Below are positions 1 to 28,509 of a stretch of DNA of 64,000 bases, piece by piece; positions within the stretch are counted from its first letter, which is position 1; every line of letters starts with the position of its first letter. The notes under the pieces are model-generated. The model made no database searches. It was not told where the DNA came from and saw only the letters and a list, made by a program, of their open reading frames with translations. This DNA comes from Perkinsela sp. CCAP 1560/9 (Eukaryota > Protista > Euglenozoa: Kinetoplastea). Location of the stretch: NCBI GenBank assembly GCA_965644495.1, contig CBFFSA010000008.1, positions 558,001-622,000 of the forward strand. The letters run 5' to 3'. The position numbers and the translations under genes are program-made.

Positions 1-253
1 GCAGAGAAGTTTTCGAAAAAAAACCGCAGAAAGGGTAGCCGGGGTCTTGGCACGCATTTTCCACCCCCCTACCCGGGGGTGACCCCCCTGCGGATCCGCA
101 GGACCTCCCTGCGTATGCGCAGGACGGGTCCGCCGAGTTCGAATTTTTTCGGAAATTTTTTTTTGAAAAAAATTTTAACGTGGCGAAAAAAATGGCAAAA
201 AAAATATTTTTCCAAAATCGTTTCCCTTATTGTATTTTGATAGTTTGGGACCT
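1..253. mobile_element. Terminal fragment of an unclassified repeat element: GC-rich hairpin cluster followed by an A/T-tract terminus
   Basis: ~195-252 aligns by eye with the reverse complement of ~8285-8340. There are palindromes at 62-81, 87-102 and 108-123. It runs off the window edge. Confidence 0.4.
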
Positions 254-349
254 ACACTAGCTTTCTCCGCAGTTGTTTTCGCAAGGTATCCCTTCTTCGA
301 ACCGTGGTGCGCCCCTCAAAATGACCCATTCTTGACCAAAAAAGGTGAA

Positions 350-551
350 AAAGTATTTTTCGGACCTAAAGGGGCATTTTTGTGTCGAAAGAATGGTATG
401 GTTGGAGTCGTATTCTCTACCCAATACGTTCGGTAGGCTTCCATTCATGTCTACGAGTGATTTCCCACGCGCAAATTTCGGATTTAGTGCTCTGAGAGCA
501 AAAATATGCGAAAATCACCCGATTTTTACCCGAAATTCGGCTATTTTTGGC
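350..551 (+). repeat. Dispersed repeat B, copy 1 (probable transposon end)
   Basis: Highly similar direct copy at 2211-2412. Both copies end in CGGCTATTTTTGGC. Confidence 0.85.
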
Positions 552-615
552 TAGTACAAGCATAGTGTAGTTTTGCAGTACTAGTACAAGCATAGTAGTT
601 TTGCATAGTACAAGC
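552..615. repeat. Short imperfect tandem repeat (TAGTACAAGCA core x3)
   Basis: Read directly from the sequence. Confidence 0.75.
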
Positions 616-1670
616 ACGCAAGTATGCGAGTGCTATGTGAGACTTGAGAGAAAAACTTGGATCGTCCCATAATAAGGAGCATAGTCTGCACATTCCAGAA
701 AATTTAATCCAAGATGAAAGCGGGCCGATAGGTGGCTTAGAAAGGGAAGTTAAAGGGGACGGCGAAGACGGTAGTGAAGGGGATAATGGAGGGATAACGA
801 AGGGGGCTATGATGGGGATGATGAAGAGGACGATGATAGAGACGATGAAGCTAACGAGCTCCGACTCCTGCCTTCCAATTTCGTCCGTAGAACTCCACGC
901 AAGACCATTCGCCTAAAAATAGAGCAGAAAAAGAAATACATACAGTATGTAGAAGTGAAATAACCCCCCCCAATGAAACGTGACCCACCCCTTTTTTTCG
1001 TACAAGTGTCCGTTTGAGCTGATTTTTGTTGCATTTTGCAGATCTCAACACAAAGACTTTGGGCGAGAAGGAATGAAACTAAAAGAAGCGAATAAGTATA
1101 ATTTAGAGAGAGATTACCATTTTGTCACTTTTTCGCCGTTCAACTTTATACACTGTTTAAGGCGAGAGTCAAAGCTTAAGACCGTTTTGTCGCTCACTTT
1201 TTGAGGCAAAGAAGACAATTCTTTACGTACACATCGGATAAGTGAAGGCTTGTCCGATGGGGTTTGTTCGTCCACTGCCTTTTGAACCATAGACCAGACG
1301 TTTTCTATGGGGGAAAAGTCTGGTGAATTGGGGGGGCAGTTTTTCAATACATCTTTCATTCTACTTGTAATGTAGTCCTTAGAGGCATGGGCGGTGTGCC
1401 GTGGCCCCATCCTGTTGAAAAATACAATTCATGGGGAAAGTTACCCTTTTGAGCGTCTCTATGGAACCCATGCAGTTTTGGCTCGCAGTGGCTGGCAGCG
1501 TTTGACAGCGTACGGCAGCATGTGGCAGCGTATGACATAATTTTGAAAAAAAAATGACATATACTAATTATTGGTCGGACTTTTATTTGAAAAATTAATA
1601 TTTCTACTAGATTCCTTTCGTTTACAAGAACAAAACATTTTATTGATCGTGTCAGAGGAGTACGTTCAGG

Positions 1671-2297
1671 TTGGAAGGGATAGATTTCCACTGCGTTACT
1701 GTGGGACATGCGATCAAAAAAACCCTTCACTCTATTGAGTCCGAAAGCATGTTTGTATTGCGCTACAAACTTCTCGTGGAGAAACCGGTGGAGAAACTTC
1801 CCGACGTGATTGCGGAAGTGGAATCGTGCCTTTCGTGTGGGTATGCGAACGTACCCGTGAGAGCTGTAATATGCCCCCAATGCCACAGGCGCAAGAACGC
1901 GGAACTATTGACTCACATGGATAAGGAAAAGCTTCGTTCTGCGGGACTGAATGTTGAAAGCGCGCAACGCGTGTGCTGCAAATACGCAAAATACATGTTG
2001 TGCGGGAAGCGCCTAAGTCCTTCAGATGTGGCTTACATCCTTTGGCAAATTGAGATGTCTCGTCAGGCCAGGCAGAATTGTAGAAGGGACGGCTCGTATA
2101 TCCGAGCGGCTCGTAGCTTAAACTCTCACTTTTTTCCGCACGGGATTCACGCAGACGATGAGCGAGTCACATCTAATATTCAAAAAAAAAATGTGTGGGT
2201 GGCCTATGATAAAGTATTTTTCGGACCCCAAGGGGCCTTTTTGTGTCGAAAGAATGGTGTGGTTGGAGTCGCATTCTCTACCCAATACGTTCGGTAG
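1671..2297 (+). CDS. Hypothetical zinc-ribbon (CxxC-x11-CxxC) ORF inside the 3-bp-TSD element; the last ~29 codons derive from repeat B
   Basis: 208-codon open frame containing CLSCGYANVPVRAVICPQC. The first ATG is only at ~1750. No family recognised. Confidence 0.3.
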   Translation: MEGIDFHCVTVGHAIKKTLHSIESESMFVLRYKLLVEKPVEKLPDVIAEVESCLSCGYANVPVRAVICPQCHRRKNAELLTHMDKEKLRSAGLNVESAQRVCCKYAKYMLCGKRLSPSDVAYILWQIEMSRQARQNCRRDGSYIRAARSLNSHFFPHGIHADDERVTSNIQKKNVWVAYDKVFFGPQGAFLCRKNGVVGVAFSTQYVR

Positions 2298-2412
2298 GCT
2301 TTGCTTCATCCCTACGAGTCATTTCCCACACGCAAATATCAGATTTAGTGCTCTGAGAGCAAAAATACCCAAAAATGACCCCATTTTTATCCGAAAATCG
2401 GCTATTTTTGGC
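2211..2412 (+). repeat. Dispersed repeat B, copy 2
   Basis: Direct copy of 350-551. Confidence 0.85.
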
Positions 2413-2451
2413 CACAATCTTTCCGTTTTCTTCAGCTTTCCAGGCCAAATT

Positions 2452-2566
2452 TTCTTTTTTAGGCTCTTCGTTAAACGCGGTGGTAGTTTTCCACGCGAAG
2501 CGCGCAGCATGTGTGACTTCTAAGTTGAAAACAACCACCGCGTTTAACGAAGAGTCTAAAAAAGAA
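2452..2566. mobile_element. ~110-bp hairpin MITE family C, copy 1
   Basis: Arms TTCTTTTTTAGGCTCTTCGTTAAACGCGGTGGT / ACCACCGCGTTTAACGAAGAGTCTAAAAAAGAA. Near-identical copy at 39827-39932. Confidence 0.75.
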
Positions 2567-3227
2567 TTTAACTATTAATAGTACAAAAACCACTTGTCTA
2601 CATGTTCGGGTAACCAGCTGGTTTGGCTTCAGGGAGAGAGGCCCTCAGAGGACGTTTTTGGCTCGCAGTGGCTGGCAGCGTGTGGCTTGGCTGGCAGCGT
2701 GTGGCACTGGCTCGCAGTGGCGGTCTGCATGGGTTCCTATGTAGGACATACATATGTACTCGTGATAGACGAGTCAGAATCCAGAATAACCAAGTATCTC
2801 CACCCTACTCCTATGGCACCCCCAACTTGATATCTTGGCGCCCAGCGTACTTTTCGACGCGGGGCTGCTTTTTGACTGGGTGCTACCCGCACATTCGCGA
2901 AATGGCTTCCTTTTTGACACACCCTGACCGTCTCTCATCCTTAACAAAAGCTTTCCGCTATTCGTAAGCCCCCCTTTCGGTAGCCGAAAAGGAGACTTCG
3001 GCATTTTTCCGAAAAAATGAAGTTTTTCAAAAAAAAAAATCAGTTTTTTTAAAGATTTTAAAAGAGCTGAAAATAGCGGGAACGTACAGATCTCAAAATT
3101 TTGAACGATAATGTGGTGCCGTAACCCCCCTACACCCCCCTGTGCGAAAAACAAGGGTGGGTCACCTATTCGTTGGGGGGGGGTTATATGTAGAAATTTC
3201 GCTTCTAATTTTTTAAATTTGTCACTT

Positions 3228-3347
3228 TTTTTAAAGCGACAGATAACTAAGGGGCGTGGTCGACGGAAAAAATGTTCGACGGGCCGAAAAGCGACAGATA
3301 ACTAGGGGGCAGTGGGGGGGGGGTGACAGATAACTAGGGGGGTACAG
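3228..3347. mobile_element. Right end of a TA-flanked (Tc1/mariner/pogo-type) element with repeated GACAGATAACTA(G/A)GGG boxes
   Basis: Three boxes ending ...GGGGGGTACAG|TA. The same family occurs at 25414-25620 (TA|CTGTAC..CTACTTATCTGTCAC). Confidence 0.7.
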
Positions 3348-4386
3348 TAAATTATAAATTTTCGGCCCTGTACTTATTAAAAACTTCCTACCAGTATGAA
3401 ACAGTACCAGGTATTGTATGCCAGATCCCATGCTGCCTCGGACCCTTGTGTGTCATGCTTTTACCGGATTCAACCTGTCCTTGTTGCTATATTTTTCCAT
3501 TTTTTACTGTATCTCCATGGAACCACAAGCAACAAGGCCATATGCGTCACAGGACCCTACTACGGAATCACGTGACGTGACCGAACCTACGACATTCATT
3601 ACTATGCAACCCTGTTCCCCGGATTCCAAAGTAAAAGCATGCCGCTCAGCTGATAATATTGGCCGAAGTGCTCATGACATGCCAAAATGCAATATTGTCC
3701 CGTCTGCGCTACAGCTTTACTATCCACCCATGTCTCACCTCAAACTTTATTCAACGGTTCCAAAAAAGAGCGACCCGGTACCTACGACGATGGATTGGTC
3801 GGATTTCTAATTAGTTTATACGTAGCAGCAAAAGAGGTCGCATAAATGCACTGCATATACGTGTGTAAACACGCAATTACATGTGTTTCATATGTAAATT
3901 ATGAAAATATGCAAAAATAAACGGTTCTCTATGTTTCTATCATATGAACGTAAACAATGTAGCAATCCGATATTCGGCAATGGGGGTGAGCCCTGATCAT
4001 CCAAGCCAATGAAAAGGTAACAAGCACAAAGTACGCGATTATCGTACAGATCAAAATGATTGCCTTGACTTCAACTATGCGTGTGAAACGTATAGAGTTC
4101 ACTCATTTTTTCAACATATTACATCAGCATAAAAGATATGCCATATTTTTTCAAGTAGCCGACTTACACGTCAATATTGGATATTCAAATAAAAACTTTT
4201 TTCAAATCTATCGAATTTATAACATCTACAATGGAAAATATGAATAATCTAAATTATGGAACGTGATTCAAATCAAGTAGCATCAATACATCGCGAAATC
4301 CGAGTTTCACATGATCAATACAAAAACTCAGCAACGTGGTTAAAAAACAATGCAAAATACACGACGACAGGTAACAAGTAGCTGGG

Positions 4387-6489: not shown

Positions 6490-7530
6490 TTAAGATGTTT
6501 TTACATCTGTGATGCGATCCGCATATGGTTCTGTTAGAATGAAGCATTTTAGTAAGTGATCATTCCAGATGGGAACTATGGCGCACGAACTAGGTGTTGG
6601 ACTTTCACTTTTATCGTGAACTTCGCTCGTATTTTTCTCGGACGAGTGTTCAGATGATGGTACTTGATCACTCCTCAGTGCTCTTGAATGAACGGAATAA
6701 GGACCATGTAAAATTTTTCGGTGGTCAGGAACAACATTTTCTGTGCCGTAGCTAATTTCTGGAATAGCTATCCAAGAAGAACCTTGCATCACAATATTCG
6801 ATCCCCCCTTGTCCGGAATCCCCTTTTCGCCTTCTTCAATAGTTCCGTTGGTAGGAAGACTATAGACAGCTAAATCGAGTAATAATTCAAATGCTGGCAT
6901 ACTTGGATTTGAAAATCTCGGCTCTTGAATAATTTTCCTTTGAGAAACGTTACTGTGGGAAGAGTTGAGTCTCGGATCGTACTGGCAGGCTATGGTCCGC
7001 TCCAGCAGTCCAATCAGACTGTCACGCATGCACATGGGCGACTCTGTCAAACAGGAATTTGTCAAATAACCTTGCTTCTTTCTTGAAGCTGCGCGGTTTC
7101 TAATGTGATCAATATTGAATGTCAAAACTTTCGATGAAACGAAACAGCAAGGAACCACATTTTCAAATTCAAGCGTCACTCCTTCGTTTGGAGCAGTGCG
7201 GATTCGCGCACGACGTATTCCCAAGTAAGGACATTTAGACGTATCTTCCACTGACCATACCTGCGAGATACCTTGAATAAGAGGGTCTTCCAGTAATTCT
7301 GTTATGTAGTACTCCACCGCTTTGTGCTTGCACCGATAATAGAAATATGATCTGCTTGTGTAGGAATTAGAGTTCTTTAATGTTTCCTCATTCTCAAAAA
7401 TATGACCAGGAACTTTGCATTGCTCAAAACATTCTTTCGGATAACACCCACGGGCGTACACCACCTGATGAATCCAGACTTCAAGATATAATTTCCAAGT
7501 TATCGTACACTCTTCGTCCATTGCTTTCAT
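6490..7530 (-). CDS. HORMA-domain protein, REV7/MAD2L2-like
   Basis: N-terminal YLEVWIHQVVYARGCYPKECF..Y.CKHKAVEYYI matches the Rev7-type pattern (FLEV.VH.ILY.R.VYP..F...HP.L..YI). The remainder is divergent. Confidence 0.6.
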   Translation of the reverse strand: MKAMDEECTITWKLYLEVWIHQVVYARGCYPKECFEQCKVPGHIFENEETLKNSNSYTSRSYFYYRCKHKAVEYYITELLEDPLIQGISQVWSVEDTSKCPYLGIRRARIRTAPNEGVTLEFENVVPCCFVSSKVLTFNIDHIRNRAASRKKQGYLTNSCLTESPMCMRDSLIGLLERTIACQYDPRLNSSHSNVSQRKIIQEPRFSNPSMPAFELLLDLAVYSLPTNGTIEEGEKGIPDKGGSNIVMQGSSWIAIPEISYGTENVVPDHRKILHGPYSVHSRALRSDQVPSSEHSSEKNTSEVHDKSESPTPSSCAIVPIWNDHLLKCFILTEPYADRITDVKTS

Positions 7531-7680
7531 TCAGCTTTGGACTCCTGCAGTTTAATCTCAGAAGTGACGAAGTCACAAATATCGCATGCAGCGTAGTATT
7601 TTATATAGCGTTGTAAAACCTTCGGCTTCTGAGCATATGGTATCAATTTCGTCTGAAGTTAAGCTACAGTCCTTCGAATA

Positions 7681-7866
7681 ATCCGGGCTAAAGTGGGCGA
7701 GGGAGCTACCGATAACACAGATGCGGCGGCTTCCCACAGGAAAGATGGTATCCCCCTTTTGGTATGAAAGCACTCGGGTGCATACAAAGTAGGAGATACC
7801 ATCTTTCCTGTGGGAGGCCGCCGCACCTGTGTTATCGGTAGCTCCCTCGCCTACTTTAGCCTGGAT
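7681..7866. mobile_element. 186-bp foldback MITE with TA TSD
   Basis: ~72-bp arms with 4 mismatches plus an imperfect inner stem and ~14-nt loop. TA at 7679-7680 and 7867-7868. Confidence 0.85.
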
Positions 7867-8283
7867 TACAGAGCCATGAAAACAAGTTCCCTAGGTATGC
7901 TTACAGCTTCCAACGCGAGGAAGTCGTCGTCCCTGACGCAAAAAGTCAGAAGTTCTGCTTTCGGCCTTGCGCCCCCTCCTTCCTCTACGGTCCTTGGTCA
8001 CACACTTCCAGTCAAATGAATCATGTGTGGTAATTTGCGCTTCGCAAATTGCTTACCGCGAATTTCGAATGATACATGTTCACGTTGTAAACCAACCCTG
8101 CGTTCAAGAAAGAGCCTAAAACAGAAACATTTAGAAAACACTGAAGAATAATTCTGTTCTCCGGCCAACACCTTTTTTCGCCCAAGAATATCAGATTTCC
8201 GTGTTTTGACCTGAGGTTTTGAATCCTTTACCAGTGGGGGTTGGTTAGGCATCTCATCGTAAAAACATCATAGAATCGTATCT

Positions 8284-8748: not shown

Positions 8749-8841
8749 CCATCCAAAGATCCTCGTTCCACACGTTTTTGACCCTGCATAGTCTAACTAG
8801 TATACTAGTATATACTAAAACACTAGTATTCGGCTAGTATA

Positions 8842-9622
8842 CAGGGGGGATCACCAATATCGGGACACCTCCTATTTTTGGGCTGTGGGTCCGTTTCACC
8901 TGATTTTTGTTGCAAAAGAGAGATCTCGACGCGAATATGATCGGAACGACATTTTGCGCCTATTTAAACACACTTGTAAAAAATGGTATAAAAAAAATAA
9001 AAAAAATCTCTAAAAAATATGCAAATTTATGTAAGAATTGTGCAAATCCCGTTAAAATTGTCTGTTAAAGGATACAATTCTCTTTTATTGCACCGGGTCA
9101 TGGGCAAGCCCGTCGTGCGGGATTGCAAGCAGGCCTAAACATTATTGATTGGCCCTCAAAGTCACCTGACTTAAACTTGATAGAAAACTTGTGGTCAATC
9201 ATGGATGACTACATTCATAGTTCTTTGCGTCCGAAAAATAGGCATGAATTGCGAGAGGCCATACCCAAGGCTATTGAATGTCTCCTAACCGAAAAGCGGG
9301 ATATCCTAGAGAAGACTCTGAAGAGCCTCCCAAAACGGTTAGAAAGTGTAAGTGAGTTACGGAAGTGTAACGGAGGGGTTATTTCATACTAAATAATTTT
9401 TTCAATGCTTTTTAAGACATTTTTATCCACATTTTCAAATGTGCAAATTTTGAAAAAAATCGTTTTTGTCGTACACACCCTACTTTTTAGGTGTGTTTCA
9501 ATAGGCGCAAAATATCGTTCCGATCATATTCGCGTCGAGATCTCTCTTTTGCAACAAAAATCAGGTGAAACGGACACATGGCACAAAAATGGCGGGTGTC
9601 CCGATATTGGTGATCCCCCCTG
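8842..9622 (+). mobile_element. Tc1-type deletion derivative with long (~130-bp) imperfect TIRs, TA TSD
   Basis: TA|CAGGGGGGATCACCAATATCGGGACACC ... GGTGTCCCGATATTGGTGATCCCCCCTG|TA. C-terminal transposase remnant at 9123-9392 (WPSKSPDLNLIENLW ... LPKRL). Confidence 0.9.
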
Positions 9623-10481
9623 TATACTATAGTATATACTATGAGATACTACTTTTTTGTAGACTGGGTATTTACTAATCGTAATCAACGGACGCATGGA
9701 AAACCTCAAGCAATTCAACGTTCAAGGCAAAGGAAGCAGGAGAATATGCTGAATGCTTCATTCTCCAACAGTTACTTAACAAATCAACCAATAAACTTCC
9801 TTAAAAATCAGGAATTGATTTAGTTTACCACAGCGCAGATGCGCACAGAGAGGTGAAAGGATGCTTATCCTGAGCGAAAGTTGAGTCGAGTGCGTGAAAA
9901 AGTGAGTTGAGGGGTGAAAGGAGTTCAGATCTCGCATTCCGCGCATAAACGCTTCCTCACATATTTTTCATTGGTATATGATGTAAGAAAAGAAACAGAT
10001 CAAGAGCGTGTAGCACGAATATACGAATAAAATTAATATATTGTAGTGTAATAAAAAATACTAAACGTGGCTATTTTCATCAATGCATAAATATTTATTT
10101 ATATGTTATTCTGAATTGATAAAGATACCTGAAGGAATACTTCAAGGACTTACACGACACTGAGTTAAACCACAGAACCCAGTTCCGACGTCAATACATA
10201 GTGCATAATAGTACAATAAACCGTTGCTGTGGACGAAAAAAGTATTTCGCTTGTTGAACACTGAGAAAAAAACCAGAGAAAAATATCTCAGATACGGAGA
10301 AGAAATACCACAAAACGGAGCTCTGGACGTACGAATATTATCGCAATATTACCACATATTCTATTTACCGCAATTCAATTGATATTTACCGCAATGTATA
10401 CCCTGTATGCTACGATACTCTATATGTATGATACTCTGTGCGCCATGTAGTTCGATATTATTTTATATGGAGTGTTCCGCG

Positions 10482-16105: not shown

Positions 16106-16139
16106 AGGGAAGGGGCGAATGGTGCAGGTATCCTGTTTC

Positions 16140-17268: not shown

Positions 17269-19619
17269 GTGTTCTACATGAGACAGCATCGCACGAAAAT
17301 AATCCAGAACCTCATATTCAACCCGTTCTTCAAAACGGAGTTTGGCGAAATTTGCATGCCAGACGACTTTGCTCGCGGTGTGCCGGATTGTTTGCGTTCG
17401 GGGGTGGCGAATCATTGGCTGTGCTCCGCAAGGGGAGAATGCGGTAACCTGGATGAGATCACATAGCCTGTTTGAAGATGCCGTCTGTTACTTTCATGGG
17501 GCGGACTATCTCCGAGATATGCCAGGAAAGCCCGATATGATGGTTTGCGACCACCGTCTTCCGCATGAAACCTGAGTCGGGCCCGAGTTAGCAAATTCTC
17601 TCCATTCCTCTCCATACGAACATTATTGACACCTTCCATGCTCTTTCTTCTTTGGGCAGACGCCGCGAACCATTTATGTACTGGGCAGATTTTCCAGAAC
17701 CGTGGAGTGCAACGAATGGTAGCGCAGAAAATTAGCCCATCGCTTGGCAACTCAGCCTTGCATGAGGAGGAGACTTCGAACTACTAATTTGCCAGGATGC
17801 AGGTTGACAAGACGTTTATTGGGAAACGGAAGTACGATCGTGAGACGCGTCAGCGCGAAACAGGCTACTGGTTCGCAACAGATACTGAGCAAGAAGGAAG
17901 AATGATGGGTCTTACCCACTGTAAATTGGTAAAGACTCGGGATCGTGCGACATTGCAAGCTTGGATTCTGTCTCATTTGGCGAGCGCACGCACAGTAGTA
18001 GTGAGTGATGCTGGAAGGCTTATACTAACCTCGGTGAGTTCTGCCGACTTGGTTCATCATACGCTCATTGGCGCAGAGAGATCCCGGTGAAACTGAACCA
18101 AATTCCGCACTTTTTCTCATTTTTGCAAAATAATTTTTTTTACCAAAGATCTGTCTTTCTTTGATATTGTTTTCACACAAACATAAACTATTGAAGCGAA
18201 TGTCGTGCGAATTTAGTTATTTCTAAACTACTTATCGCTTATTTTAACAAGATGATGCCCTATTTATTGCCTATTTAATACCGTGCTCTGGAGATGTGGG
18301 TTCTTTTGTGGGTGCACCCTAACGATTACATTAATATCTTCGTGAAGTGAATCACAGTGCTCAAAGTGGCTTAAAGATCATCACTTAACCCCTCTAGAGG
18401 GGATACATGATCCCTCTAGAGGGGTACAGGGATGACTCTGGGTGGGCAGTACGTGGTCTGAGATCCTGTGGAACCCGTGGAAAATCGTTCGGTCGATACT
18501 CCCATCCTCAACATCATGGAATTGGAAATCGTACCAAGATGCGGACTAATGGAGCACGGCACAACTTTTCGCCCCAAGGCAAGTACAAGTGGGAGAGTGT
18601 TAGCCACAAACGGCAGTGGTCTACAACTCAAGAAACTCACACCACCACTGGAATCCGCTAATTCCATGGTTAAGCAGAGGTTCAACAGTGAACAGAATCC
18701 AAATCCTCGCAGAGAAATGCACAGGAATTTTGAAGCGAATTTTGAAGAGAATGAGGACAATGTATTGCTCTAATTATTGCTAAATTTGAAGGAGTAGTGT
18801 GCCATCTAAGCAAGAAAAAGGCTCAGAGTTGATGAAGGATGAAATTTTTCGTGAAAACGTTTTGGAGAAAGTGTGGAATTTGGTTCAGTTTAACCGATAT
18901 TCCCCTTAATACAATGGACGGTATCATCGGTACATGATCCGCCCATAACGGATGTCGCCAAAGGGGGTTCGACACGGACTCTGTCGGTAGAGAGGTCCAG
19001 GCAACTCGCCTCTCTTTACGCGGCCGGAGGGGCGCACTTCAACCAACCACTGCCTCGCGATAATGCAAGGCAGTCACGCCCAGTGGTTCTCAAGGGAGGC
19101 CACCATGGTGCGTAGCTCCCAGGAGAAAAAAACGCGAGAAGGAGAAAGCCAGGGAGGGAAGTAACCTTACTCGAGGAGTGAGTCGGGGAGCGGTGAAGAG
19201 TTGGAAGTACATCCCCTACTTCCACGACAAGAGGTACAGTCCCTGCTAGCCGTCAGCCGGGCTTTTAAAAAGAAAATGTATGCCCGTTTCCGGGAAAAGA
19301 AAGGAAGGGCTAGCAAAATGTACCAACAAGGTACAGAAATTGTATCTTTATCATTAACGTTTATGCTATGGATCACAGCAAGGAATTTTTCACCTATCAA
19401 GGGTACCACACCAATCATGCGGAGGGTGTGCACGGTACCTTAAAGGGGTGGGTGAAACGGCAACACTACAACTTCGGTTCGAAACCTATGGACTTACAGC
19501 GAAATGTCACCCTTCAGTATGTAAAGTTTGGAAACATACATCACGCTCGTGAACAGGCATGGCACCTCCGCATGCAAAACATTATTCTTTGCGTCAAAAA
19601 GCCACTACGGTGCATTTAA
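17269..19619 (+). pseudogene. Merlin transposase pseudogene split by an insert at ~18047-19358
   Basis: QVDKTFIGKRKYDR, RDRATL, VVSD.WKAY (frameshift) before the insert. DHSKEFF..GYHTNHAEG.HG.LK after it. The 5' boundary is approximate. Confidence 0.8.
18085..18896. mobile_element. Non-autonomous TIR element nested in the Merlin insert (superfamily unclear)
   Basis: ~29-bp inverted repeat CGGT(G/T)AAACTGAACCAAATTCC(G/A)CACTTT. The right side runs on to CCCC|TTAA. No matching TSD on the left. Confidence 0.6.
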
Positions 19620-19793
19620 TCGCGATTGGAATGGGGAAGATTTGAGTGAGAGTAGCGGGACCGATTCGGAATGAGAAATTTTTAATGGTTTCGGTTTAGT
19701 ACTCAACGAACTCCCGGATTTTCGTTGAGAACTCAAAGAACGTATCCCCAACCCAAATCGGCTATCAACTTCAACATAAAGAAAATCAACATA

Positions 19794-19858
19794 CTGTGCC
19801 CCCCCACTTATAGTGCCGCGGTTTTCGACCAAACGGCACCATAAGTGGGATGGGGTAG
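19794..19858. repeat. TA-flanked 65-bp hairpin; probable terminus of the pogo element or a mini-MITE
   Basis: CCCACTTATAGTGCCG ... CGGCACCATAAGTGGG, with TA at 19792-19793 and 19859-19860. Confidence 0.6.
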
Positions 19859-19891
19859 TATGTTTCAGGTCGAGTATCAAAATTTTCCCCC

Positions 19892-20873
19892 TCAAAAAAC
19901 TTGAATGAGATAAGTACAACCCCCAGGAATCCTGTGGAAGTCACAATTAGTGGGGATTCTATGAACCCGATGGGCTGTGTACTCATCCGCTACAAGAGCT
20001 GTCGCAGGTTGCGAACCTCCAAGTAAGGAAGATTGATCGTGCATGATCTCTTCAAATACTTGACGGTTCATCCAACCAGTCGAAGTTACGTACACCTTCA
20101 AAGCGTTGTCGAGCGTCCGAGCAACATGACGTCGAGCGTCTCGCAGTATGCGGGACTTTTCATCTTCTGCATTGGACTTGAGCAGTATCGTAGGAGGAAG
20201 GGGAAGAGCTTTTCTGTTGTGAACATCGTAAACACCGGAAAGAAAAACAGTTATACTTTCCTTGTCGTTTGTGGTTACGGCTTGCACGTTACGAAGCCCT
20301 ATGGGAGCCAATGTTACTCCCGTATTTTCACCATCAACGGGAAGAGACGTTTCATCCCCAAATATCACATACGCGTATGAACGGACTTGATTTTGTATGT
20401 AGAGCTGCCGTGCCCAAGCTCGTATTCGCGAGCCCACGTCGGAAGGACCCACGTAGTGGACACGTCCAAATCTTCGGTTTGTCCACCCGAAAAGACGCTT
20501 GAAGCGCTTGTATATGCGTTCCTTCGTCTCATCGGCAAAGCTTTGAAAAGCTGTATTCCGTATGTTTCCATAACGGAAAAGACGAATGCCTTCGTTACAA
20601 CATGTTTACCATTGACTTCTTGGAGCAATTTAAGGTGCACTTTCCTTAAAATTGCCTTCCGCTCTTTGTTAAGTCTCTCTGGCGCTTTCTTCACTTGAGA
20701 CCACGATTAGTACGTGATTGATAAAAAGAGGCACCGTTGCTTTTAATACTTCGGACAGTTCTTAAACTGATCCGATACTTTTCGCTCAGCCTTTTTGTGT
20801 CCAATTCGCTCAGACACACATTCAACTTCTCTTGCATAGTCAAACACACTCTAGAGGTCCTAGGTGTGCTCAT
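19892..20873 (-). pseudogene. pogo/Tigger-type (CENP-B-like HTH + DDE_1) transposase pseudogene
   Basis: LTMQEKLNV..LSEKYRISLRTVRSIK HTH, then GDETSL, KESITV, TGWMN..VF, ADEYTAH and IPGGCT.LIQ. Contains stop/frameshifts and is truncated before the third catalytic D. Confidence 0.85.
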
Positions 20874-21347
20874 CTCTAGAGGCTCATCTCTAGGACTCTA
20901 GAGGTCCTAGGTGTGCTCATCGGAAGAGAATCAAGTGTGTTGGGGGGAAGACGGCTGGCCACCGGGGGACCAATTCTCGGCGCTGGCGGAATCACCGTAA
21001 ACCAGCGTCCCAAAGGACCTGAAATCGCCGATCCACGAGTGTGCGCTTTGTCTAGCGTCTCGTTCTCGTTCGAATCGACAGTCATTGAAAGGATAAAGGG
21101 AACTATTAATAAAGTTTCAATGATTTCGATAAAAGAAAATATTAAAATTTTACGCTACATTTACTCTACCTTTTTGGTAAAAAAAATTCCCGTCTACTAT
21201 AAACCCAAAGGGGGCGGGCATACCTAAAACTTTAATAAAGCAAAATGTAGTTTTTTCGCGAGTTAAAATGACGAGGATTCGCCAGATCATGCGAGAACAT
21301 GTGAGATCTCTCCGGAGCGGATTTGGCACGCGAGGGTGGTTGGACGC

Positions 21348-21721
21348 GGGGAGAGTCAAGGAATATTGCATAAGTCAAGGAATATTGCATAAGCCGTAAA
21401 TTGCTTATTTTTGTTTCCTCATGCGCGAGCGTCGGGTGAATTGGTTTATTGAAGCTTGTGACGACTTTAATTGCATTGAATATTTCTCTTTAAACAATTT
21501 TGGAGAAATCAGTGCTGCCCTAGGGCTTCCCTGGCTCATCGGCCCGGCCGGCCCCTCGGTGCGTTCGGCCTCAAAACAACTTGTATTCCCCAAAACAACT
21601 ACCTTCCCCCCTCAACTCCGAGAACTCACCGGGAGCAGGACAGAAGTGCAAGGGCTTTAATTTCATTGGTCCTGACTTATGCAATATTCCTTGACTAATG
21701 CAATATTACTTTACTTTGGCC
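21348..21721. mobile_element. 374-bp non-autonomous element with 9-bp TSD (Mutator- or Merlin-type ends)
   Basis: GTTGGACGC at 21339-21347 and 21722-21730. GG..CC termini. ~46-bp imperfect TIRs, each built from two 19-bp AGTCAAGGAATATTGCATA-type units. Confidence 0.8.
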
Positions 21722-21932: not shown

Positions 21933-22487
21933 TTAAGCAAAATCCGACAGCTTTAATTCTGTATGGTCCATGTCTGAACTTTCAGTTGACGTTTCGGAAG
22001 ATTCTTCCTCTTCCGTGGCACAAACACTCTTTGTCTCGCGATCTTTATCGTAGTTCTCAAGCTCCGAATCATGTTTCAGTAATTCAATCTCAATATCCTC
22101 ATAGCCTTTGCCTGCTATGGTCTGCAAGGGAGTAGCGTTCATTGCATTACGTGAACATACAGACCAACCAGCGTCAAGAAGAAGCCGGACGGCTTCTGCC
22201 TGGTTGTTCAAAGCAGCCCAGTGAAGTGCTGTATTGCCCCCCAATGTTTTGGCTTCGCGTTGCAAAACTTTACCATACGGTTCACTCATTAGAAATCGCA
22301 TAACATCGGTGTTACCATTTGCAGCTGCACAGTGCATCATGGTCAATCCTGAGTCATTTGAACAGTTGGGATCATTAGCAGTGCTCTCCAAAACACGTTG
22401 GATTTCTTGTATATCTCCACTTGATCCGACACGAGCGCAGGCTAAAAGATCCTGTATTTGACCTTCACAACTTGGTGTATGCGACAT
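21933..22487 (-). CDS. Ankyrin-repeat protein with acidic tail (Yar1-like architecture)
   Basis: SGLTMMHCAAANGN and GGNTALHWAALNN ankyrin repeats. Acidic C-terminus. Confidence 0.85.
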   Translation of the reverse strand: MSHTPSCEGQIQDLLACARVGSSGDIQEIQRVLESTANDPNCSNDSGLTMMHCAAANGNTDVMRFLMSEPYGKVLQREAKTLGGNTALHWAALNNQAEAVRLLLDAGWSVCSRNAMNATPLQTIAGKGYEDIEIELLKHDSELENYDKDRETKSVCATEEEESSETSTESSDMDHTELKLSDFA

Positions 22488-22869: not shown

Positions 22870-24033
22870 TTAGTGAAATGAAAATAATGTCCCGGTCTCT
22901 TTTCTAAGTGTAATAAACATTGAGTGCTCTGCGTCACCTCTAAGCTCAAATATATTTGGGTATCTTTGAAGGAAACGAATGAGTATATTCGTAGAAGGCC
23001 ACACAAAGAGATCAAAGTCATCAGTATCAAGCATCATTTTGACCATTTCACGGTGAGTGATATCCCCCCAGCGTTCGATATGTGTTCGCAGACGGTGGTG
23101 AAAACGCTCCTCAGCTCTCATCAAAGACGTTCGTCGAAGGTCATCAGCAGCATCGCAACTATGCAGCATGTGAGGACGAGCAATACGCAACTCATTCTTC
23201 CCTGCAAGCTCGACGAATAGGTGACGGTGTCTGTGAATGAAATCTCGAAAGCAACCCGTTGTGCGAAGCAAAGTATCAGCCACGCAAGGTGGTATCATTC
23301 CGGAGTCACGCAGCTTATTCTGAATCAGATTGCAGTTCATGCTGCCACGGTATGGATTGTACACCTCGTCATCGAGAAGTTCCACAACTTCCTTCGCAAT
23401 GCGCACCTCACGAGGATGAATCCCAACCTCATGGTAGTGATTATTGAAGGGAGCCCCGCAGCAGACCTCTAAGCAAAACACGGACGGTTGGATCGTCAGT
23501 AAATGAGAGCAACACACACAATTGGAATCCGGGCTCAAGGTACCAAGGTACAAACGCTCGGTACGATTTACAGTAAGATGACAAATCAATTGCAGCCCAT
23601 CCGGCCACGTGCTTCGTGACGGGTACACTAGTGAGAGACAACTGCTTAAATCGAGCAAATTGCGCAAGGGAATTACTTGTAAGTCATCCATAGCAGGTGC
23701 CGTCGCCGTTACCTGAGAGCCTGGTTGAAGCACGGGGCACATAAGAACTTGCAACCCATTCAACAAAACGCAAACCGTGGCTTTATTGTGAGAAAACACA
23801 CCCGGTGGTTCGGCGGAGTGCGTATAAAAAGTGGACGGTTCTCGTGTAGAGGAGCGAGAAACCTGTTCCGAAAGTTCGACAAATTTATTTGTGGTCTCCA
23901 TCCCTTCAACGGAAGTGAAATGTGTTCTCACGGGAGGATGATTTATTAGAGCATGCTGCAAATACCGATAAAATCGAAAGATTCCAACAGAAAAATCTAA
24001 AGTAATATTATCAGCATGGAGATGAATAAGCAT
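22870..24033 (-). CDS. Hypothetical protein
   Basis: 387-codon ORF in the cluster orientation. No family confidently recognised and the start may be downstream. Confidence 0.7.
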   Translation of the reverse strand: MLIHLHADNITLDFSVGIFRFYRYLQHALINHPPVRTHFTSVEGMETTNKFVELSEQVSRSSTREPSTFYTHSAEPPGVFSHNKATVCVLLNGLQVLMCPVLQPGSQVTATAPAMDDLQVIPLRNLLDLSSCLSLVYPSRSTWPDGLQLICHLTVNRTERLYLGTLSPDSNCVCCSHLLTIQPSVFCLEVCCGAPFNNHYHEVGIHPREVRIAKEVVELLDDEVYNPYRGSMNCNLIQNKLRDSGMIPPCVADTLLRTTGCFRDFIHRHRHLFVELAGKNELRIARPHMLHSCDAADDLRRTSLMRAEERFHHRLRTHIERWGDITHREMVKMMLDTDDFDLFVWPSTNILIRFLQRYPNIFELRGDAEHSMFITLRKETGTLFSFH

Positions 24034-24091: not shown

Positions 24092-24183
24092 GGTGGTTCC
24101 TTTCAGCTTACAGAAGAAGGTACCACTGCTGTGCACTTCGCATTGAAAAGTACCTCCGCATTTACCGAAGAGTCTAAAAAAGA
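24092..24183 (-). mobile_element. Degenerate inverted copy of MITE family C
   Basis: Ends CCGCATTTACCGAAGAGTCTAAAAAAGA. The interior resembles the reverse complement of 2478-2540. Confidence 0.55.
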
Positions 24184-24277
24184 TGGCAAATATCAAGAAT
24201 AATTCATTTTTTGGGTGAAAATACTAGATTTTTTTGCAGTCGGCGAAAATACATGTCTGAAACTCGTCTACCTAAGC

Positions 24278-25275
24278 TCACAATGCCAGCGCTACGTTAT
24301 CCATCACGAAATGAGATAAAAATGCTTCAGCGAAGTTTAACAGGCGCCGTAGCGCATGCACATATTCACGGATTGATGGATTGTTCATCCAATGCTTTAA
24401 ATTGACAAATGCAATTTTTTCGCGACTTACCTGGGAATGTGCGAGAGATAGAGAGACTCCGAGTGGCCAAGGGTGATTTCCAATGGAAAGCTGAAAATAC
24501 CTTTGGTGAGCCTCCACGAAATCTTGGTTTGGATAGATGGAATATAAAATGGAATAAAAATGTCGAACGAGTTCTTCGTTCGTCCTGCCCGTTTTAAGAT
24601 TCACAAGAAGGGGAAGTAATGATTTCTGCGTTTCTAAAAGTTTTGCGCCACCTTTGAATTGAGAAGTGTATTTCGTGTGATGCCCTTTACAACCTTCAGA
24701 AGCGCCGAAAAAGTCAAGAATGTGTGACTGAATCCAGGCGGACAGAATAAAGCATATAGAATGTAAAACATATTTTTCTTTTTCTTCGGTGAGTTGGATT
24801 CCTTTTTCATCAATCGAATCTTTTGTGTTGAGGAATGACCTTTTGTCGTCCCGAGGTACAGACCTTACGAATCCATCAAGCTTTCTTTTGGAAGTCGTTA
24901 ATACCTTCTCTGCAAATTGAGACGACACAGTATCGCTTTTCACTTCGTAGAGGTCACAAAGAAAGTCTTGTAACTCTTTATCAAATACGGGGGCGTATCA
25001 AATACGGCTTTGGGCGTCCTTTCAATGTCATGATTATCTTCAGTGGCATTTCTAAATCCTACTTCCCCTGTATGCAAGTCAGACGGTGATAGACACGAGC
25101 GCACTTCCTTAATAGATCCGTCACAGATTTCATCACACAGATCAATGTTCAACGTGTTCGAGCTGGAAAGATCTTCAATTTTAGACAAAGTCGAAACTAC
25201 TTTTAGATCCGGTTGATTCGGAGACGGTTTCCGCCTCTTCAACGCGCGCGACTGTGATGATAGCTCGGACCACAT
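24278..25275 (-). pseudogene. PRP18: Pre-mRNA splicing factor Prp18, frameshifted by a 17-nt insertion at ~24980-24996
   Basis: C-terminal ORF has EAHQRYFQLSIGNHPWPLGV..SREKI..HWMNN..REYVHALRRL (Prp18 domain) but no upstream ATG. Removing 17 nt fuses it to the ATG-started ORF 25275-24940. Confidence 0.8.
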
Positions 25276-25373
25276 ATACCATATTTCTTATTTATTTGAA
25301 AATAGCTTTTGAATAATGAAAAAGAGTACAAAAAGTGGCAAAATTATCTTTAGTATTCTTCATGGTACAGGTG

Positions 25374-26105
25374 GAGATGTACTTACGGCAGTCTTTATTT
25401 ACGGATAATATTACTGTACTCCCCCCTACTTATCTGTCACTACTTTTCGCGAAAAGGTGACAGATAACTTGTATTTACGGCAGTCTTTATTTACGGATAA
25501 TATTACTGTACCCCCCCTACTTATCTGTCACTACTTTTCGCGAAAAGGTGACAGATAACTAGGGGGGTAGGGGTGTGACAGATAACTAGGGGGATCAGTG
25601 TGCGACAGATAACTAGGGAGGGGCTCTAAAAAAGGCGGTAAATCTCTTCGCTAGGAAGACGAGGTCTCTCCAATGCTGCAAAGATGAGCAAAAACGGATC
25701 AAAAACATCAAAATTCCGAGGGGGGGGCAAGATCAACTGAAACCACTGTATAGATGTTCATGGCCCCTGGCATTCAAGAACAAGTAGCTGCGGCGGCCGC
25801 AGAATCGGATACGAACTTAGGTTCCAAAAGAAATTCATTTTCTTCCGAGGAAATGGAAAGTGTTGCAGGCCGCGCGTAGTTTTCTCCGTCGCAACAACAT
25901 TGGTGTATTCTCCCGTACAATCCCGAAAATAATATCTTCAAATTTGGGCTTCCTGCAAAACTTAACGAATCAGATAAAGCTACATATAACCAAGATGAGA
26001 AAAACTTATTTACAAGTGGATTCATGTACGGATAAACTATTTAAGGATAAAATCGCCAATTTCTTATCCTTTATCCGTAAATAAATATTTCCGTAAATAT
26101 ATCTC
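25374..26105. mobile_element. TIR element (GAGATRTAYTTACGG..TTTATTTACGGATAA ends) carrying nested fragments
   Basis: ~34-bp imperfect inverted repeats at 25374-25408 and 26071-26105. No TSD found. Confidence 0.55.
25384..25620. repeat. ~86-bp tandem duplication plus GACAGATAACTAGGG boxes (left end of the family seen at 3228-3347)
   Basis: 25384-25469 is repeated at 25475-25560. TA|CTGTAC terminus at 25414 and 25506. Confidence 0.8.
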
Positions 26106-26564
26106 GGACGTAAATACAGTCCGCGTCATATTGATCCCCCCCTCAGGAAAGGTTAGTTTTTTTATCCGATTTTGCTCATCTTTGCAGCATTCGAGAGATC
26201 TCGTTCCCGTAGGAAAGTATTTTGCCGTAATAAAACGTAAGGAGGGGGGGCGCCCCCTGGAGAGAATCCCAAACTTAGGAAACAACAGAAAAAGTTAGGA
26301 AAATGACAAAAATGATGTGCGATCGCCGCGTAGCTACAAAGCTTTTTTTCTAGGAATTCGCATTTTTCATGTAACTAAAGGTATTTTTAAGGGATTCAGA
26401 CGGGGATACGTGCCGTTTCGGCCTCTTCGGGGTGCTGGAAGAAGAAGTCATGAAAAAATAAGCAATTTTTAATCTATTCAAAATTTTATTAAAAACAATG
26501 TGTTTTTACTATGTATGGAAATTATTTTCCATAATTTCGAAGTGTCTGGCTAAAGGGTAAAAAC

Positions 26565-28313
26565 CAGGGGTCCTTAAAACTTTATAAACCCCCGCTCACG
26601 AATAAGTGACCCCCCCTTATTTTTAGCACATGGGGGCGTGGGTGGGTTATCATACCACTGTTTCGTTCAAAATTTCGAGATCTGCACGTCCCCGCTGTTT
26701 TTAGCTCATTTTAAAATTTTAAAATTTAGTCAAAAAAAATAATTGGCTTTTCAACTTTTTTTTCCAAAAATGACCAAATCACCATATCGGCTTCCAAAAG
26801 GGGCGCTTACGGATAGTGGTAAGGTTCTTTTGAAGATGAGACATGCAGAAGGTGTTCCGATAAAACAATTATCCCGTGATTTTAACGTCTCTAGAAGGAT
26901 AATCAAAAAATATCTGAAAGAAAAAAAATCTAGCGGGGAATACACTTTGAGTCCTGTGGGTGGAGGTATTTGGTTATTCTACCAAATGACACATCTATTA
27001 CAAGTAAGACGTACATAGAAACATCAAAACAGGTAGATTTCCCCCCTAATAGTGTATTTCAACAGGATGGGGCAACGGCACATACTGCCCGTGCCTCCAA
27101 AGAGTATATTGAGAATCGAATGAGTGATGTTCTAAGAAACTGGCCCCCCAACTCGCCCGACCTTTCCCCCATAGAAAACGTCTGGTCTATGGTCCAAGAG
27201 GCGGTAGACGAACAAACGCCATCGGATAAGCCTTCACTTATCCGATGTGTACGTAAAGCATGGTCTTCTTTAACTCAAAAAGTGATCGACAAAACAGTAT
27301 TAAGTTTTGATTCTCGACTTAAGGAGTGTATAAGATTGAAGGGCGAAAAAGTGAAAAAATGTTAATTCTTCTCTAAATTGTGCGTATTCGTTTCTTTTTG
27401 TCTCATTTCTTCACGCGCAAAGTCCTTGCGTTGAGATCTGCAAAATGCAACAAAAATCAGCTCAAACGGACATTTGTACGAAAAAAAAGAGGGGGGTCAC
27501 TTTTCGTGAGCGGGGGTTTATATATAGTTTATAGTATTTCAAAAAAAATTATGGTACTATAAATGGCATTTATAGCACTATAAATACTTTAAAGTGTTTG
27601 AGAAACTTTATTTTTAAGGGAGGCTAAAAGGGGTTCAAGAAGCCCAAAATTGTATTGGATGTTGTAAGGGGTGATCATCTCAGGGGCCTGGCGTTCGGCT
27701 CGCAGTTCCGGGGTTGAAAACCCTTTTCTGAGATGGCAGTCTCAGGGAGACTCCATGTTGAGGGTGTCAAAAGCTTGCCGAGAACTAGTTGGTCGGCGTC
27801 TGTACCATCAGTGAGATGACAGTGTCAGGGAAGACTACGAGAAGGTCCCGACCCTGCTCCCCATGTTCAGGGTGTCAAAAGCTTAGTAAGTTGTTGATCG
27901 TACTTTCCCCAGGGACACAGCGCAGTCCCTTCGTAAGAAGCCACTTAAGGTTTGGGTCCTGCAAAGCAGCATTGCTAACCCCATGATTGATTTTCCATAG
28001 GAGGTGTCGCTCAAATTCCTGTAATTGTGGTTTCACGGTGAAGGCATCCAAAGATCCTCGTTCCACACGTTTTTGACGCTGAGTGCTTCGCATCCACTCC
28101 TCAAAATTTAGGTCATGACTTTTAGTTCAAGTGCGTGAGGACCGAGGAGTAGGAGACTCGAATCCCCTTTTAGCAAAAAAAGGGTTTCGTCGTTCCGTCG
28201 CATATTTGGCATTTCTGAGAAACAAAAAAAATAAAGTTTTATATATAGTATTTAAAAGTTTATAGTACTATAAAAGTACTATAATAAAAGTTTTAAAGTT
28301 TTAGAGACCCCTG
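26565..28313 (-). mobile_element. hAT family A deletion derivative, 8-bp TSD GTAAAAAC
   Basis: TIR CAGGGGTC(CT/TC)TAAAACTTTA, with TSD at 26557-26564 and 28314-28321. Remnant of a hAT-like N-terminal region at 27875-28093. Confidence 0.9.
26587..27518 (+). mobile_element. Tc1-type (DD35E) internally deleted transposon, TA TSD
   Basis: TIR AACCCCCGCTCACGAA(T)AAGTGACCCCCC. HTH start at 26770 and C-terminal ORF 26970-27365 (QQDGATAH..WPPNSPDLSPIENVW). Confidence 0.92.
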
Positions 28314-28509
28314 GTAAAAACAGTGGCAAAGTACTTTCCTATGGGAACGAGATCTCTCGAATGCTGCATAGATGAGCAAAATCGGATAAAAAAACTAAAA
28401 TTTCCTGAGTGGGGGATCAATGTGACGAGGACTGTATATCTCGGACGCACACATAACTGTATTGTCAAAGGTTCGAAAACATAACTGCCATTTCAAAATA
28501 GTACAACTA

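What the first reader, a model, noticed from the sequence alone, without database searches (positions are those of the whole stretch)
1..28436. A kinetoplastid-type gene cluster invaded by four recognisable DNA-transposon groups plus unclassified TIR elements
Seen: intronless, unidirectional host genes interleaved with Tc1-type, pogo, hAT and Merlin transposase remnants, plus elements with 3-bp and 9-bp TSDs. Known: trypanosomatids are considered to lack DNA transposons, and to my knowledge only Merlin has been reported in other kinetoplastids (Bodo, Perkinsela). Inference: if the host is a kinetoplastid, this is a largely undescribed cut-and-paste mobilome, possibly acquired horizontally from a host or cohabitant. 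This is the best candidate for novelty in the window.
Basis: partly seen in the sequence, partly recalled or inferred. Interest (0 to 1): 0.85.

Follow-up and report, generated by a model that had tools for sequence, protein, structure and literature searches.

The report
Active DNA transposons in kinetoplastid endosymbiont
The genome of a kinetoplastid that most likely lives inside a marine amoeba is packed with recently moving cut-and-paste jumping genes of at least six kinds, although this group of protists was thought to have almost none, and at least two kinds look inherited from kinetoplastid ancestors rather than caught from the amoeba.

Summary
Confirmed. Window 1-28.4 kb holds seven intronless minus-strand host genes (26%) among at least 58% transposon and repeat DNA: Tc1-like (DD35E), pogo, hAT and Merlin remnants, plus elements with 3-bp and 9-bp target duplications. 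The host is a prokinetoplastid (GlyRS tree 96/94), probably the Perkinsela-like symbiont of a Paramoeba; its assembly is 21 Mb, against 9.5 Mb for Perkinsela CCAP1560/4. Genome-wide matches: Tc1 150 or more, IS30 127, Merlin 109, Harbinger 60, pogo 59, hAT 16.

New here: (1) a second, 99%-identical allele of this locus differs by three transposon presence/absence events, so junctions are real and movement is recent; (2) the hAT has a Hermes fold, 6-bp duplications and Asp instead of the third catalytic Glu, and its only named kin come from the free-living prokinetoplastid Papus; (3) the Merlins share the Bodo/Perkinsela motifs but keep terminal repeats and 8-bp duplications. Merlin and hAT therefore look ancestral, not caught from the amoeba; IS30 came from bacteria; Tc1, pogo and Harbinger origins are open. 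This scan reported the mobilome and the IS30 family before, on other DNA of this genome. The papers searched report only inactive Merlin in kinetoplastids.

The parts
8..553 (+). Piece of an unclassified non-coding dispersed repeat whose full copies (about 0.68 kb) end in a ~115-nt palindrome
   Evidence: 91% over 546 nt to copies in L069, L006
963..3184 (-). Tc1-like element (family A relative), TA duplication, split by the TAT element
   Evidence: tblastn 67-79% to L034 transposase; ends and TA
1463..2737 (.). Element with 13-bp TIRs starting GG and a 3-bp TAT duplication; no transposase found; Harbinger-like by ends only
   Evidence: end sequence at 6 other genomic places
2207..2567 (+). 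3' piece of the palindrome-ended repeat, nested in the TAT element
3233..3349 (.). Orphan pogo-type end with three 23-bp subterminal repeats
   Evidence: repeat family D3; relatives in L086, L042, L015
4387..6363 (-). Host gene: mitochondrial-type HSP70
   Evidence: PF00012 E 8e-264
6490..7530 (-). Host gene: HORMA-like protein (weak)
   Evidence: PF02301 E 0.003
7679..8054 (.). Unclassified repeat starting with a 190-bp near-perfect hairpin
   Evidence: copies in L086, L004
8380..8754 (.). Very high-copy short repeat, unclassified
   Evidence: contig depth about 2100 against 4.5 for single-copy DNA in run X1; 92-94% copies in L073, L014
8750..12660 (.). Small repeat split by the hAT (8750-8786 and 12348-12660); unsplit copy at 28045-28313 shows the empty site
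8787..12347 (-). hAT transposon, 31-bp TIRs starting CATAG, 6-bp duplication; transposase 12106-10482 with a frameshift at 11691 and about 780 bp of the 3' coding part missing at 10490/10501
8842..9622 (+). Tc1-like family B deletion derivative, about 180-bp TIRs, TA duplication, nested in the hAT left end; absent from the other allele
12779..13519 (-). Host gene: LRR protein
14089..14994 (-). Host gene, 301 aa, no family
   Evidence: same gene called in the other allele
16165..16601 (+). Merlin transposase remnant 1
   Evidence: tblastn E 1e-23
16610..20897 (-). pogo/Tigger-type transposase in several frames (CENP-B-like start at 20897, catalytic core 20605-19895, tail 16610-16738), interrupted by a 66-bp mini element and by Merlin 2; ends not located
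   Evidence: (37% to L048, E 1e-37)
16739..19754 (+). Merlin 2 with both TIRs, degraded transposase 17354-18047 and 19362-19607, duplication 5 or 9 bp
18085..18896 (.). Unclassified element with 32-bp TIRs nested in Merlin 2; no duplication readable
21348..21721 (.). 374-bp non-autonomous element, GG..CC ends, exact 9-bp duplication; Merlin- or Mutator-like by duplication length only
21933..22487 (-). Host gene: ankyrin repeat protein
22870..24033 (-). Host gene, 387 aa, no family
24278..25275 (-). Host gene: Prp18, in two frames
   Evidence: PF02840 E 2e-24
25368..28459 (.). Outer TA-flanked element with CAG..CTG ends and pogo-type repeats (tentative boundaries)
26117..28434 (.). Tc1/mariner-type non-autonomous element, 110-bp TIRs at 93%, TA duplication
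26587..27518 (+). Tc1-like family A, 932-bp internal-deletion derivative, 99.4% to its nearest genomic copy
40128..42122 (-).

Best explanation
This is an ordinary kinetoplastid one-strand gene cluster whose intergenic DNA has filled with nested, mostly dead or non-autonomous copies of terminal-inverted-repeat transposons. Autonomous copies elsewhere in the genome encode DDE/D transposases that bind the terminal repeats, cut the element out and paste it into a new target, leaving superfamily-specific duplications (TA for Tc1 and pogo, 6 bp for this hAT, 8 bp for Merlin, 3 bp for IS30). SHOWN: the anatomy, the copy numbers, empty sites, amplification of deletion derivatives in trans, and presence/absence differences between two alleles. 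INFERRED: the transposases are made by read-through from the host polycistron plus trans-splicing; new insertions survive mainly between genes and inside older elements; weak selection in an obligate endosymbiont lets them pile up and helps explain 21 Mb against 9.5 Mb. Origin is mixed: Merlin and the DDD-type hAT were probably inherited from kinetoplastid or prokinetoplastid ancestors, IS30 entered once from bacteria, and Tc1, pogo and Harbinger are unresolved.
For: Host: GlyRS tree; kinetoplastid-type SSU on contig C11, which also carries Tc1, Merlin, pogo, IS30 and Harbinger matches. Recent movement: allele ctg4014l is collinear at 98.6-99.0% but lacks the 781-bp Tc1-B, has an extra 724-bp TA-duplicating element with a clean empty site at window 2752/2753, and has an extra 4.4 kb with a second hAT at 1626-1974. 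19 copies of one deletion derivative, most within 0.4-1.5% of their nearest copy, in two bursts. Seven IS30 ORFs at 97-100% protein identity on six contigs. hAT: Hermes profile match E 2e-10 and Foldseek E 7e-8; 6-bp duplication exact in three copies and 5/6 in a fourth; Asp at the third catalytic site in 22 of 22 aligned rows that keep the motif; named relatives only from Papus. Merlin: 8-bp duplications with GG..CC ends in L059, L073, L079 and (one base shifted) L075; 22 of 28 residues identical to the Bodo Merlin around the first catalytic Asp, counted by eye. IS30: one clade (98), sister to a mostly verrucomicrobial group (99).
Against: No RNA evidence for any transposase; no fully intact autonomous copy of this hAT family was seen. 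Host placement rests on one gene with a long branch. The symbiont reading is indirect (a second, amoebozoan-type SSU on C58; no myosin and no paraflagellar rod match, both without a positive control). Papus is represented by a transcriptome, so its hAT transcripts could come from a contaminant, and most hAT relatives are unnamed metagenome proteins. The Merlin kinship was read by eye, not by a tree. The 9.5-Mb Perkinsela assembly is short-read and may have collapsed repeats, and the 21 Mb may hold some haplotype duplicates, so the size contrast may be overstated. The Tc1-B site in the other allele holds an 18-bp palindrome, not the plain ancestral site.
Confidence: 0.8

Rival explanations
1. 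The symbiont caught most or all of these transposons recently from its amoeba host, with which it shares a cell.
For: Permanent intracellular contact; trypanosomatids lack class II elements (PMC12278014); the Tc1-A family has no named close relative (best outside hits 31-46%), so a donor not in the databases is possible.
Against: Merlin motifs match Bodo and Perkinsela, and no Merlin was found in the P. pemaquidensis host genome (PMC8101967). hAT kin are in free-living Papus. Within-genome families have diverged to 34-60% protein identity, which needs long residence. The three close homologues traced lie on repeat-rich contigs of the same sample that look like this genome, not on recognisable amoeba contigs. 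No Tc1, Merlin, pogo or IS30 match falls on the amoeba-rDNA contig C58.
Confidence: 0.1
2. The elements are ancient, dead relics or domesticated genes, as proposed for Merlin in Perkinsela CCAP1560/4 and Bodo.
For: Every copy inside the window is broken; many genomic matches carry stops.
Against: Intact TIRs and duplications, copies at 99% identity in unrelated flanks, and allelic presence/absence differences.
Confidence: 0.04
3. The transposons belong to the amoeba (or another cohabitant) and were joined to symbiont genes by a chimeric assembly.
For: The assembly does contain an amoebozoan-type rDNA contig; no short-read contig spans the whole stretch.
Against: A second long-read assembly gives the same gene-element junctions over 2753-8842 and 9622-17155 on molecules that differ by 1%; the families sit on all large contigs, with target duplications at the junctions.
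Confidence: 0.02
4. The host is a free-living or fish-parasitic prokinetoplastid (Papus- or Ichthyobodo-like), not an endosymbiont; the endosymbiont-drift part of the mechanism would then fall.
For: GlyRS is only 48% identical to Perkinsela CCAP1560/4 and does not nest in that clade.
Against: AU test does not reject a sister position to Perkinsela (p 0.43); amoeba-type SSU in the same assembly; no paraflagellar rod match (no positive control); earlier notes file the culture under Paramoeba atlantica (unchecked).
Confidence: 0.08

Closest known systems
Merlin of Bodo saltans and Perkinsela sp. CCAP1560/4 (Lopes et al. 2021, PMC8101967)
   Same: IS1595-type DDE domain and the same lineage-specific motifs around the first Asp and the final Glu
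   Different: There: a few divergent copies, no TIRs or duplications, called inactive or domesticated. Here: 109 matches, ORFs of 300-450 aa, long TIRs with subterminal repeats, 8-bp duplications
hAT superfamily (Hermes); Repbase hAT6 group with 6-bp duplications (cited in PMC12730594)
   Same: Hermes fold with helical insertion domain, D..D, CxxH, RW motif, C-terminal dimerisation region, short TIRs; 6-bp duplication as in hAT6
   Different: Third catalytic residue is Asp throughout the clade, 13% identity to Hermes; kinship to hAT6 (Blackjack lineage) not tested
Tc1/mariner (IS630-Tc1-mariner), DD35E type
   Same: DDE_3 and HTH_Tnp_Tc3_2 domains, TA duplication, about 1.35-kb full length, deletion derivatives amplified in trans
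   Different: DD35E rather than DD34E; family A begins with A, not CAG; nearest outside proteins 31-46% and unnamed; not reported from kinetoplastids in the papers searched
pogo/Tigger
   Same: DDE_1 core, CENP-B-like start, TA-flanked ends
   Different: Window copy broken, ends not located; not reported from kinetoplastids
Bacterial IS30 family
   Same: HTH_38 plus integrase core, 315 aa, 44-49% to bacterial proteins, imperfect inverted ends, 3-bp duplication
   Different: Resident and multi-copy in a eukaryotic nucleus; a 2013 screen of 430 eukaryote genomes found only IS607 (PMC3673617). Not in the window itself; nested in a sister hAT copy

Membership tests
Kinetoplastea (Prokinetoplastina) host | Conserved gene branches inside Kinetoplastea | tested here: met
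   GlyRS: Kinetoplastea 100/98, with Papus and Perkinsela 96/94; one gene only
Kinetoplastea (Prokinetoplastina) host | Intronless genes in one-strand clusters | tested here: met
   All host ORFs on the minus strand across 64 kb
Perkinsela-like endosymbiont | Lives inside a Paramoeba; flagellum lost | tested here: inconclusive
   Amoebozoan-type SSU in the assembly; no paraflagellar rod match but no positive control; AU p 0.43
Tc1/mariner | DD(34-37)E catalytic domain with paired HTH | tested here: met
   L034: D158, D236, E272 = DD35E; PF13358 E 2.5e-15, PF01498
Tc1/mariner | TIRs and TA duplication | tested here: met
   single TA at empty sites in three sister hAT copies and at the allelic site
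pogo/Tigger | DDE_1 domain with CENP-B-type DNA-binding start | tested here: inconclusive
   Window pieces miss Pfam DDE_1 but match a genomic pogo-like ORF at E 1e-37; CENP-B_N E 0.02; 59 DDE_1 matches genome-wide
pogo/Tigger | TIRs and TA duplication of the coding copy | tested here: inconclusive
   Ends of the 16610-20897 copy not located
hAT | Hermes-type fold with CxxH and RW motifs and dimerisation domain | tested here: met
   Profile to Hermes E 2e-10; model pLDDT 81, Foldseek E 7e-8, TM 0.6 by target
hAT | D-D-E catalytic triad | tested here: not met
   Third residue Asp in 22 rows, Glu in none: D-D-D variant
hAT | 8-bp duplication (canonical) | tested here: not met
   6 bp in four copies, as in the described hAT6 exception
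hAT6 (Repbase) | Phylogenetic membership in the Blackjack-related hAT6 group | not testable with these tools
   No Repbase sequences on hand
Merlin | DDE_Tnp_IS1595 domain | tested here: met
   PF12762 E 7e-14 for L059; window remnants match it at up to E 1e-57
Merlin | GG..CC TIRs and 8-9-bp duplication | tested here: met
   8/8 in L073 and L079, 7/8 in L059; window copy ambiguous
PIF/Harbinger (for 1463-2737) | DDE_Tnp_4 transposase linked to these ends | tested here: inconclusive
   3-bp duplication and GG ends fit; no transposase in the copy; 60 DDE_Tnp_4 matches elsewhere not linked to these ends
IS30 | HTH_38 plus DDE core, bacterial IS30 as nearest kin, inverted ends, 2-3-bp duplication | tested here: met
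   (locus L043/L055, outside the window)

The most novel reading that the evidence does not exclude
Ancestral kinetoplastids carried a diverse cut-and-paste mobilome, including an undescribed hAT lineage with a D-D-D active site and 6-bp target duplications, which trypanosomatids lost. In this endosymbiont it is still moving, has been joined by a bacterial IS30 that became a eukaryotic transposon, and has roughly doubled the genome: the first eukaryotic parallel to the insertion-sequence blooms of young bacterial endosymbionts.
Probability: 0.45. Interest if true: 0.85.

Novelty: new variant of a known kind. Interest (0 to 1): 0.7.

Why it matters
A 2025 survey concluded that trypanosomatids have no DNA transposons, and the only kinetoplastid report is of inactive Merlin without ends. 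This genome shows that cut-and-paste transposons can be expressed, move and amplify under polycistronic transcription and trans-splicing, so their absence from trypanosomes is a loss that needs explaining, not a built-in barrier. It answers the open question of the Merlin paper (real mobile copies with TIRs exist in this lineage). It offers native transposases (Tc1-like, Merlin, IS30) as candidate tools for a symbiosis with no genetics, a D-D-D hAT that tests how fixed the hAT active site is, and a case of repeat-driven genome growth in an obligate eukaryotic endosymbiont. The amoeba host genome of the same culture makes host-symbiont transposon exchange directly testable.

Tried and rejected
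Viral origin: no relative of the Merlin or Tc1-A transposase in viral contigs (these scans see close relatives only). Merlin in JGI metagenomes: none; the hAT alignment was too divergent to scan. Rfam: only hairpin-driven microRNA matches below threshold, so no ribozyme or RNA gene in 1-30 kb. The 780-bp stretch present in sister hAT copies was first read as a second Tc1 insertion (a local hop); it is the hAT C-terminal coding region deleted in the window copy. P-element class for the CATAG-ended element: rejected, Hermes scores far above P transposase. An 8-bp duplication for the hAT with uneven ends: rejected by three other copies. Orientation bias of elements against the polycistron: window copies point both ways; not pursued. 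Trans-splicing signals before transposase starts: pyrimidine share 0.72-0.78 for hAT and Merlin, 0.53-0.55 for Tc1 and IS30, host genes 0.38-0.85; not discriminating. Species name: could not be checked with the tools.


Full report
Observation. Window 1-28436 contains seven host ORFs, all on the minus strand and without introns: mtHSP70, a HORMA-like gene, an LRR gene, an ankyrin gene, Prp18 (in two frames) and two unknown genes. They cover 26% of the span, while the rest of the window is 84% coding; at least 58% of the span is transposon or dispersed-repeat DNA. Using longer copies from elsewhere in the genome as probes, transposase remnants map to Tc1-like (1117-3004, 9090-9362, 26770-27359), hAT (10364-12106), Merlin (16165-16601, 17354-19607) and pogo (19967-20521). 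Exact target duplications flank eight elements: TA (five), TAT, 6 bp and 9 bp. The elements are nested: Tc1-B in the hAT, the hAT in a small repeat whose empty copy lies at 28045-28313, Merlin 2 in the pogo tail, and three levels at 25368-28459.

Host. The window is G000:C8:558001-622000; the assembly has 21.0 Mb in 110 contigs. GlyRS hits kinetoplastids best, 55% to Papus and 48% to Perkinsela CCAP1560/4. A careful tree puts it in Kinetoplastea (100/98) and with Papus and the Perkinsela clade (96/94), on a long branch; a sister position to Perkinsela is not rejected (AU p 0.43). The assembly holds two SSU genes only about 74-80% alike: a 50% GC one on C11 and a 38% GC one on the small contig C58, which I read from my own knowledge as kinetoplastid-type and amoebozoan-type. 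No myosin and no paraflagellar rod match was found (no positive control).

Genome-wide load (lower bounds, matches not copies). DDE_3: 392 candidates, all 150 scored significant. IS1595/Merlin 109. DDE_1 59. DDE_Tnp_4/Harbinger 60. hAT dimerisation 16. IS30 127. Many lie in open frames of full transposase length. C11, which carries the kinetoplastid-type SSU, has matches to Tc1, Merlin, pogo, Harbinger and IS30.

Recent movement. The window's mtHSP70 is also encoded on a 251-kb contig of ENA assembly ERZ24900291. That allele is collinear with window 1974-17155 at 98.6-99.0%, so the gene-element junctions are not a chimera. It differs by three elements: it lacks the 781-bp Tc1-B (an 18-bp palindrome stands between the two TAs, as after excision and templated repair, though a simple local duplication cannot be excluded); it has a 724-bp TIR element with a TA duplication where the window has a clean single TA at 2752/2753; and it has 4.4 kb with a second hAT family where the window has 348 other bases at 1627-1973. 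It also keeps the base whose loss frameshifts the window hAT at 11691. Whether the two are haplotypes of one clone or two isolates is not known. The 932-bp Tc1-A derivative has 19 copies with both ends among my loci, in two shallow clusters, most within 0.4-1.5% of their nearest copy: a deleted element copied in trans by intact 1.35-kb relatives such as L034 (334 aa, DD35E).

The hAT. Sister copies are 95-99% identical and give 6-bp duplications in three copies exactly and one at 5/6. The 714-aa frame of L044 has D..D, CxxH and RW motifs; a profile of its family hits Hermes at E 2e-10 and the model (pLDDT 81) matches Hermes at E 7e-8, far ahead of P and Mutator-type folds. The residue aligned to the third catalytic Glu of Hermes is Asp in all 22 rows that keep the motif. 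I found no paper on a D-D-D hAT clade; a hAT6 group with 6-bp duplications is known (PMC12730594) but kinship could not be tested. Among 20 relatives looked up, the only named ones are two families from the Papus ankaliazontas transcriptome; one falls in the same well-supported subclade as the symbiont proteins, with unnamed metagenome sequences.

The Merlins. Full copies have GG..CC ends, long subterminal repeat arrays and 8-bp duplications. Their catalytic region matches the Bodo saltans Merlin printed in the supplement of PMC8101967 at 22 of 28 residues around the first Asp, against about 11 for typical animal and fungal rows, and the window's Merlin 2 shares a ten-residue stretch around the final Glu exactly with Bodo (by eye). 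Lopes et al. found no TIRs, called the elements inactive or domesticated, and found no Merlin in the P. pemaquidensis host. The present copies are the mobile form of that kinetoplastid lineage.

IS30. A sister hAT copy on C4 holds a 1,424-bp insertion with imperfect inverted ends, a 3-bp duplication and an intact 315-aa IS30-family ORF. Seven copies are 97-100% identical in protein on six contigs, with subfamilies down to about 40%. Nearest outside proteins are bacterial IS30 at 44-49%; four symbiont sequences form one clade (98), sister to a mostly verrucomicrobial group (99). This is the one clear horizontal entry, from bacteria and not from the amoeba. The scan reported this family before (s1-369804, s1-399723 and others). 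It is not in the window.

Mechanism. Shown: TIR-bounded elements with superfamily-typical duplications, autonomous-length ORFs elsewhere, trans-amplified derivatives, allelic differences. From established knowledge of DDE/D transposases: binding of the ends, excision and strand transfer into a staggered target. Inferred: expression by read-through of the host polycistron and trans-splicing (no RNA data; upstream pyrimidine tracts were not discriminating); survival of insertions between genes and inside older elements; accumulation under weak selection in an endosymbiont. I put the whole account at 0.8.

What is known. PMC12278014 found no DNA transposons in 57 trypanosomatid genomes and cites only Merlin in Bodo and Perkinsela. 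The Perkinsela CCAP1560/4 genome paper reports 9.5 Mb and mainly ingi-type retroelements. Searches for Prokinetoplastina with transposase, and for long-read Perkinsela repeat studies, gave nothing relevant; the library lacks most subscription papers and Repbase.

Verdict. Real, recent and apparently undescribed in print: known superfamilies in a lineage thought to lack them, with one variant active site. Interest 0.7.

Noticed in passing
L043:77-1500 (G000:C4, about 209.2-210.6 kb): Intact IS30-family element nested in a sister copy of the window's hAT; 127 matches genome-wide; reported before by this scan.
   Followed up: yes
G000:C2:618440-637295: Twelve Merlin-domain matches at a 1,692-bp period: a tandem array built from a Merlin piece.
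   Followed up: no
G000:C20:103431-108237: Nine matches to the IS30 N-terminus at about 540-580-bp spacing: a tandem array from an IS30 piece.
   Followed up: no
window 8380-8754: Short repeat with contig depth about 470 times single-copy DNA; no ORF, no Rfam match; class unknown.
   Followed up: partly
window 8-553, 2207-2567, 8079-8361, 24063-24233, 39771-39949: Family of non-coding repeats ending in a ~115-nt palindrome; two direct copies flank a Merlin piece in L069. No TIR pair or duplication found; could be Helitron/Helentron-like.
   Followed up: partly
window 7679-7868: 190-bp near-perfect hairpin (88-nt arms, 90%) heading a repeat also seen in L086 and L004.
   Followed up: no
window 24940-25020: Prp18 is split into two frames beside a short internal duplication; not covered by the second allele, so real change versus assembly error is open.
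   Followed up: no
window 15894-16016 and 3659-3808: Remnants of non-LTR retrotransposon C-termini.
   Followed up: partly
G000:C58:32767-34872: Amoebozoan-type SSU rRNA on a small contig: probably host DNA left in the symbiont assembly; it also has one weak Harbinger-domain match.
   Followed up: partly
window 40128-42122: GlyRS does not nest in the Perkinsela CCAP1560/4 clade: this symbiont may be a deeply separate lineage or an independent symbiosis; one gene cannot tell.
   Followed up: partly
window 30001-32000: GC skew flips from -0.23 to +0.10 with raised GC around the eIF3i-like gene.
   Followed up: no
L089 (ENA ERZ21831265): Contig of another sample with tandem Tc1 pieces (38% to family A), a pogo ORF and retroelement pieces; organism unknown.
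   Followed up: partly
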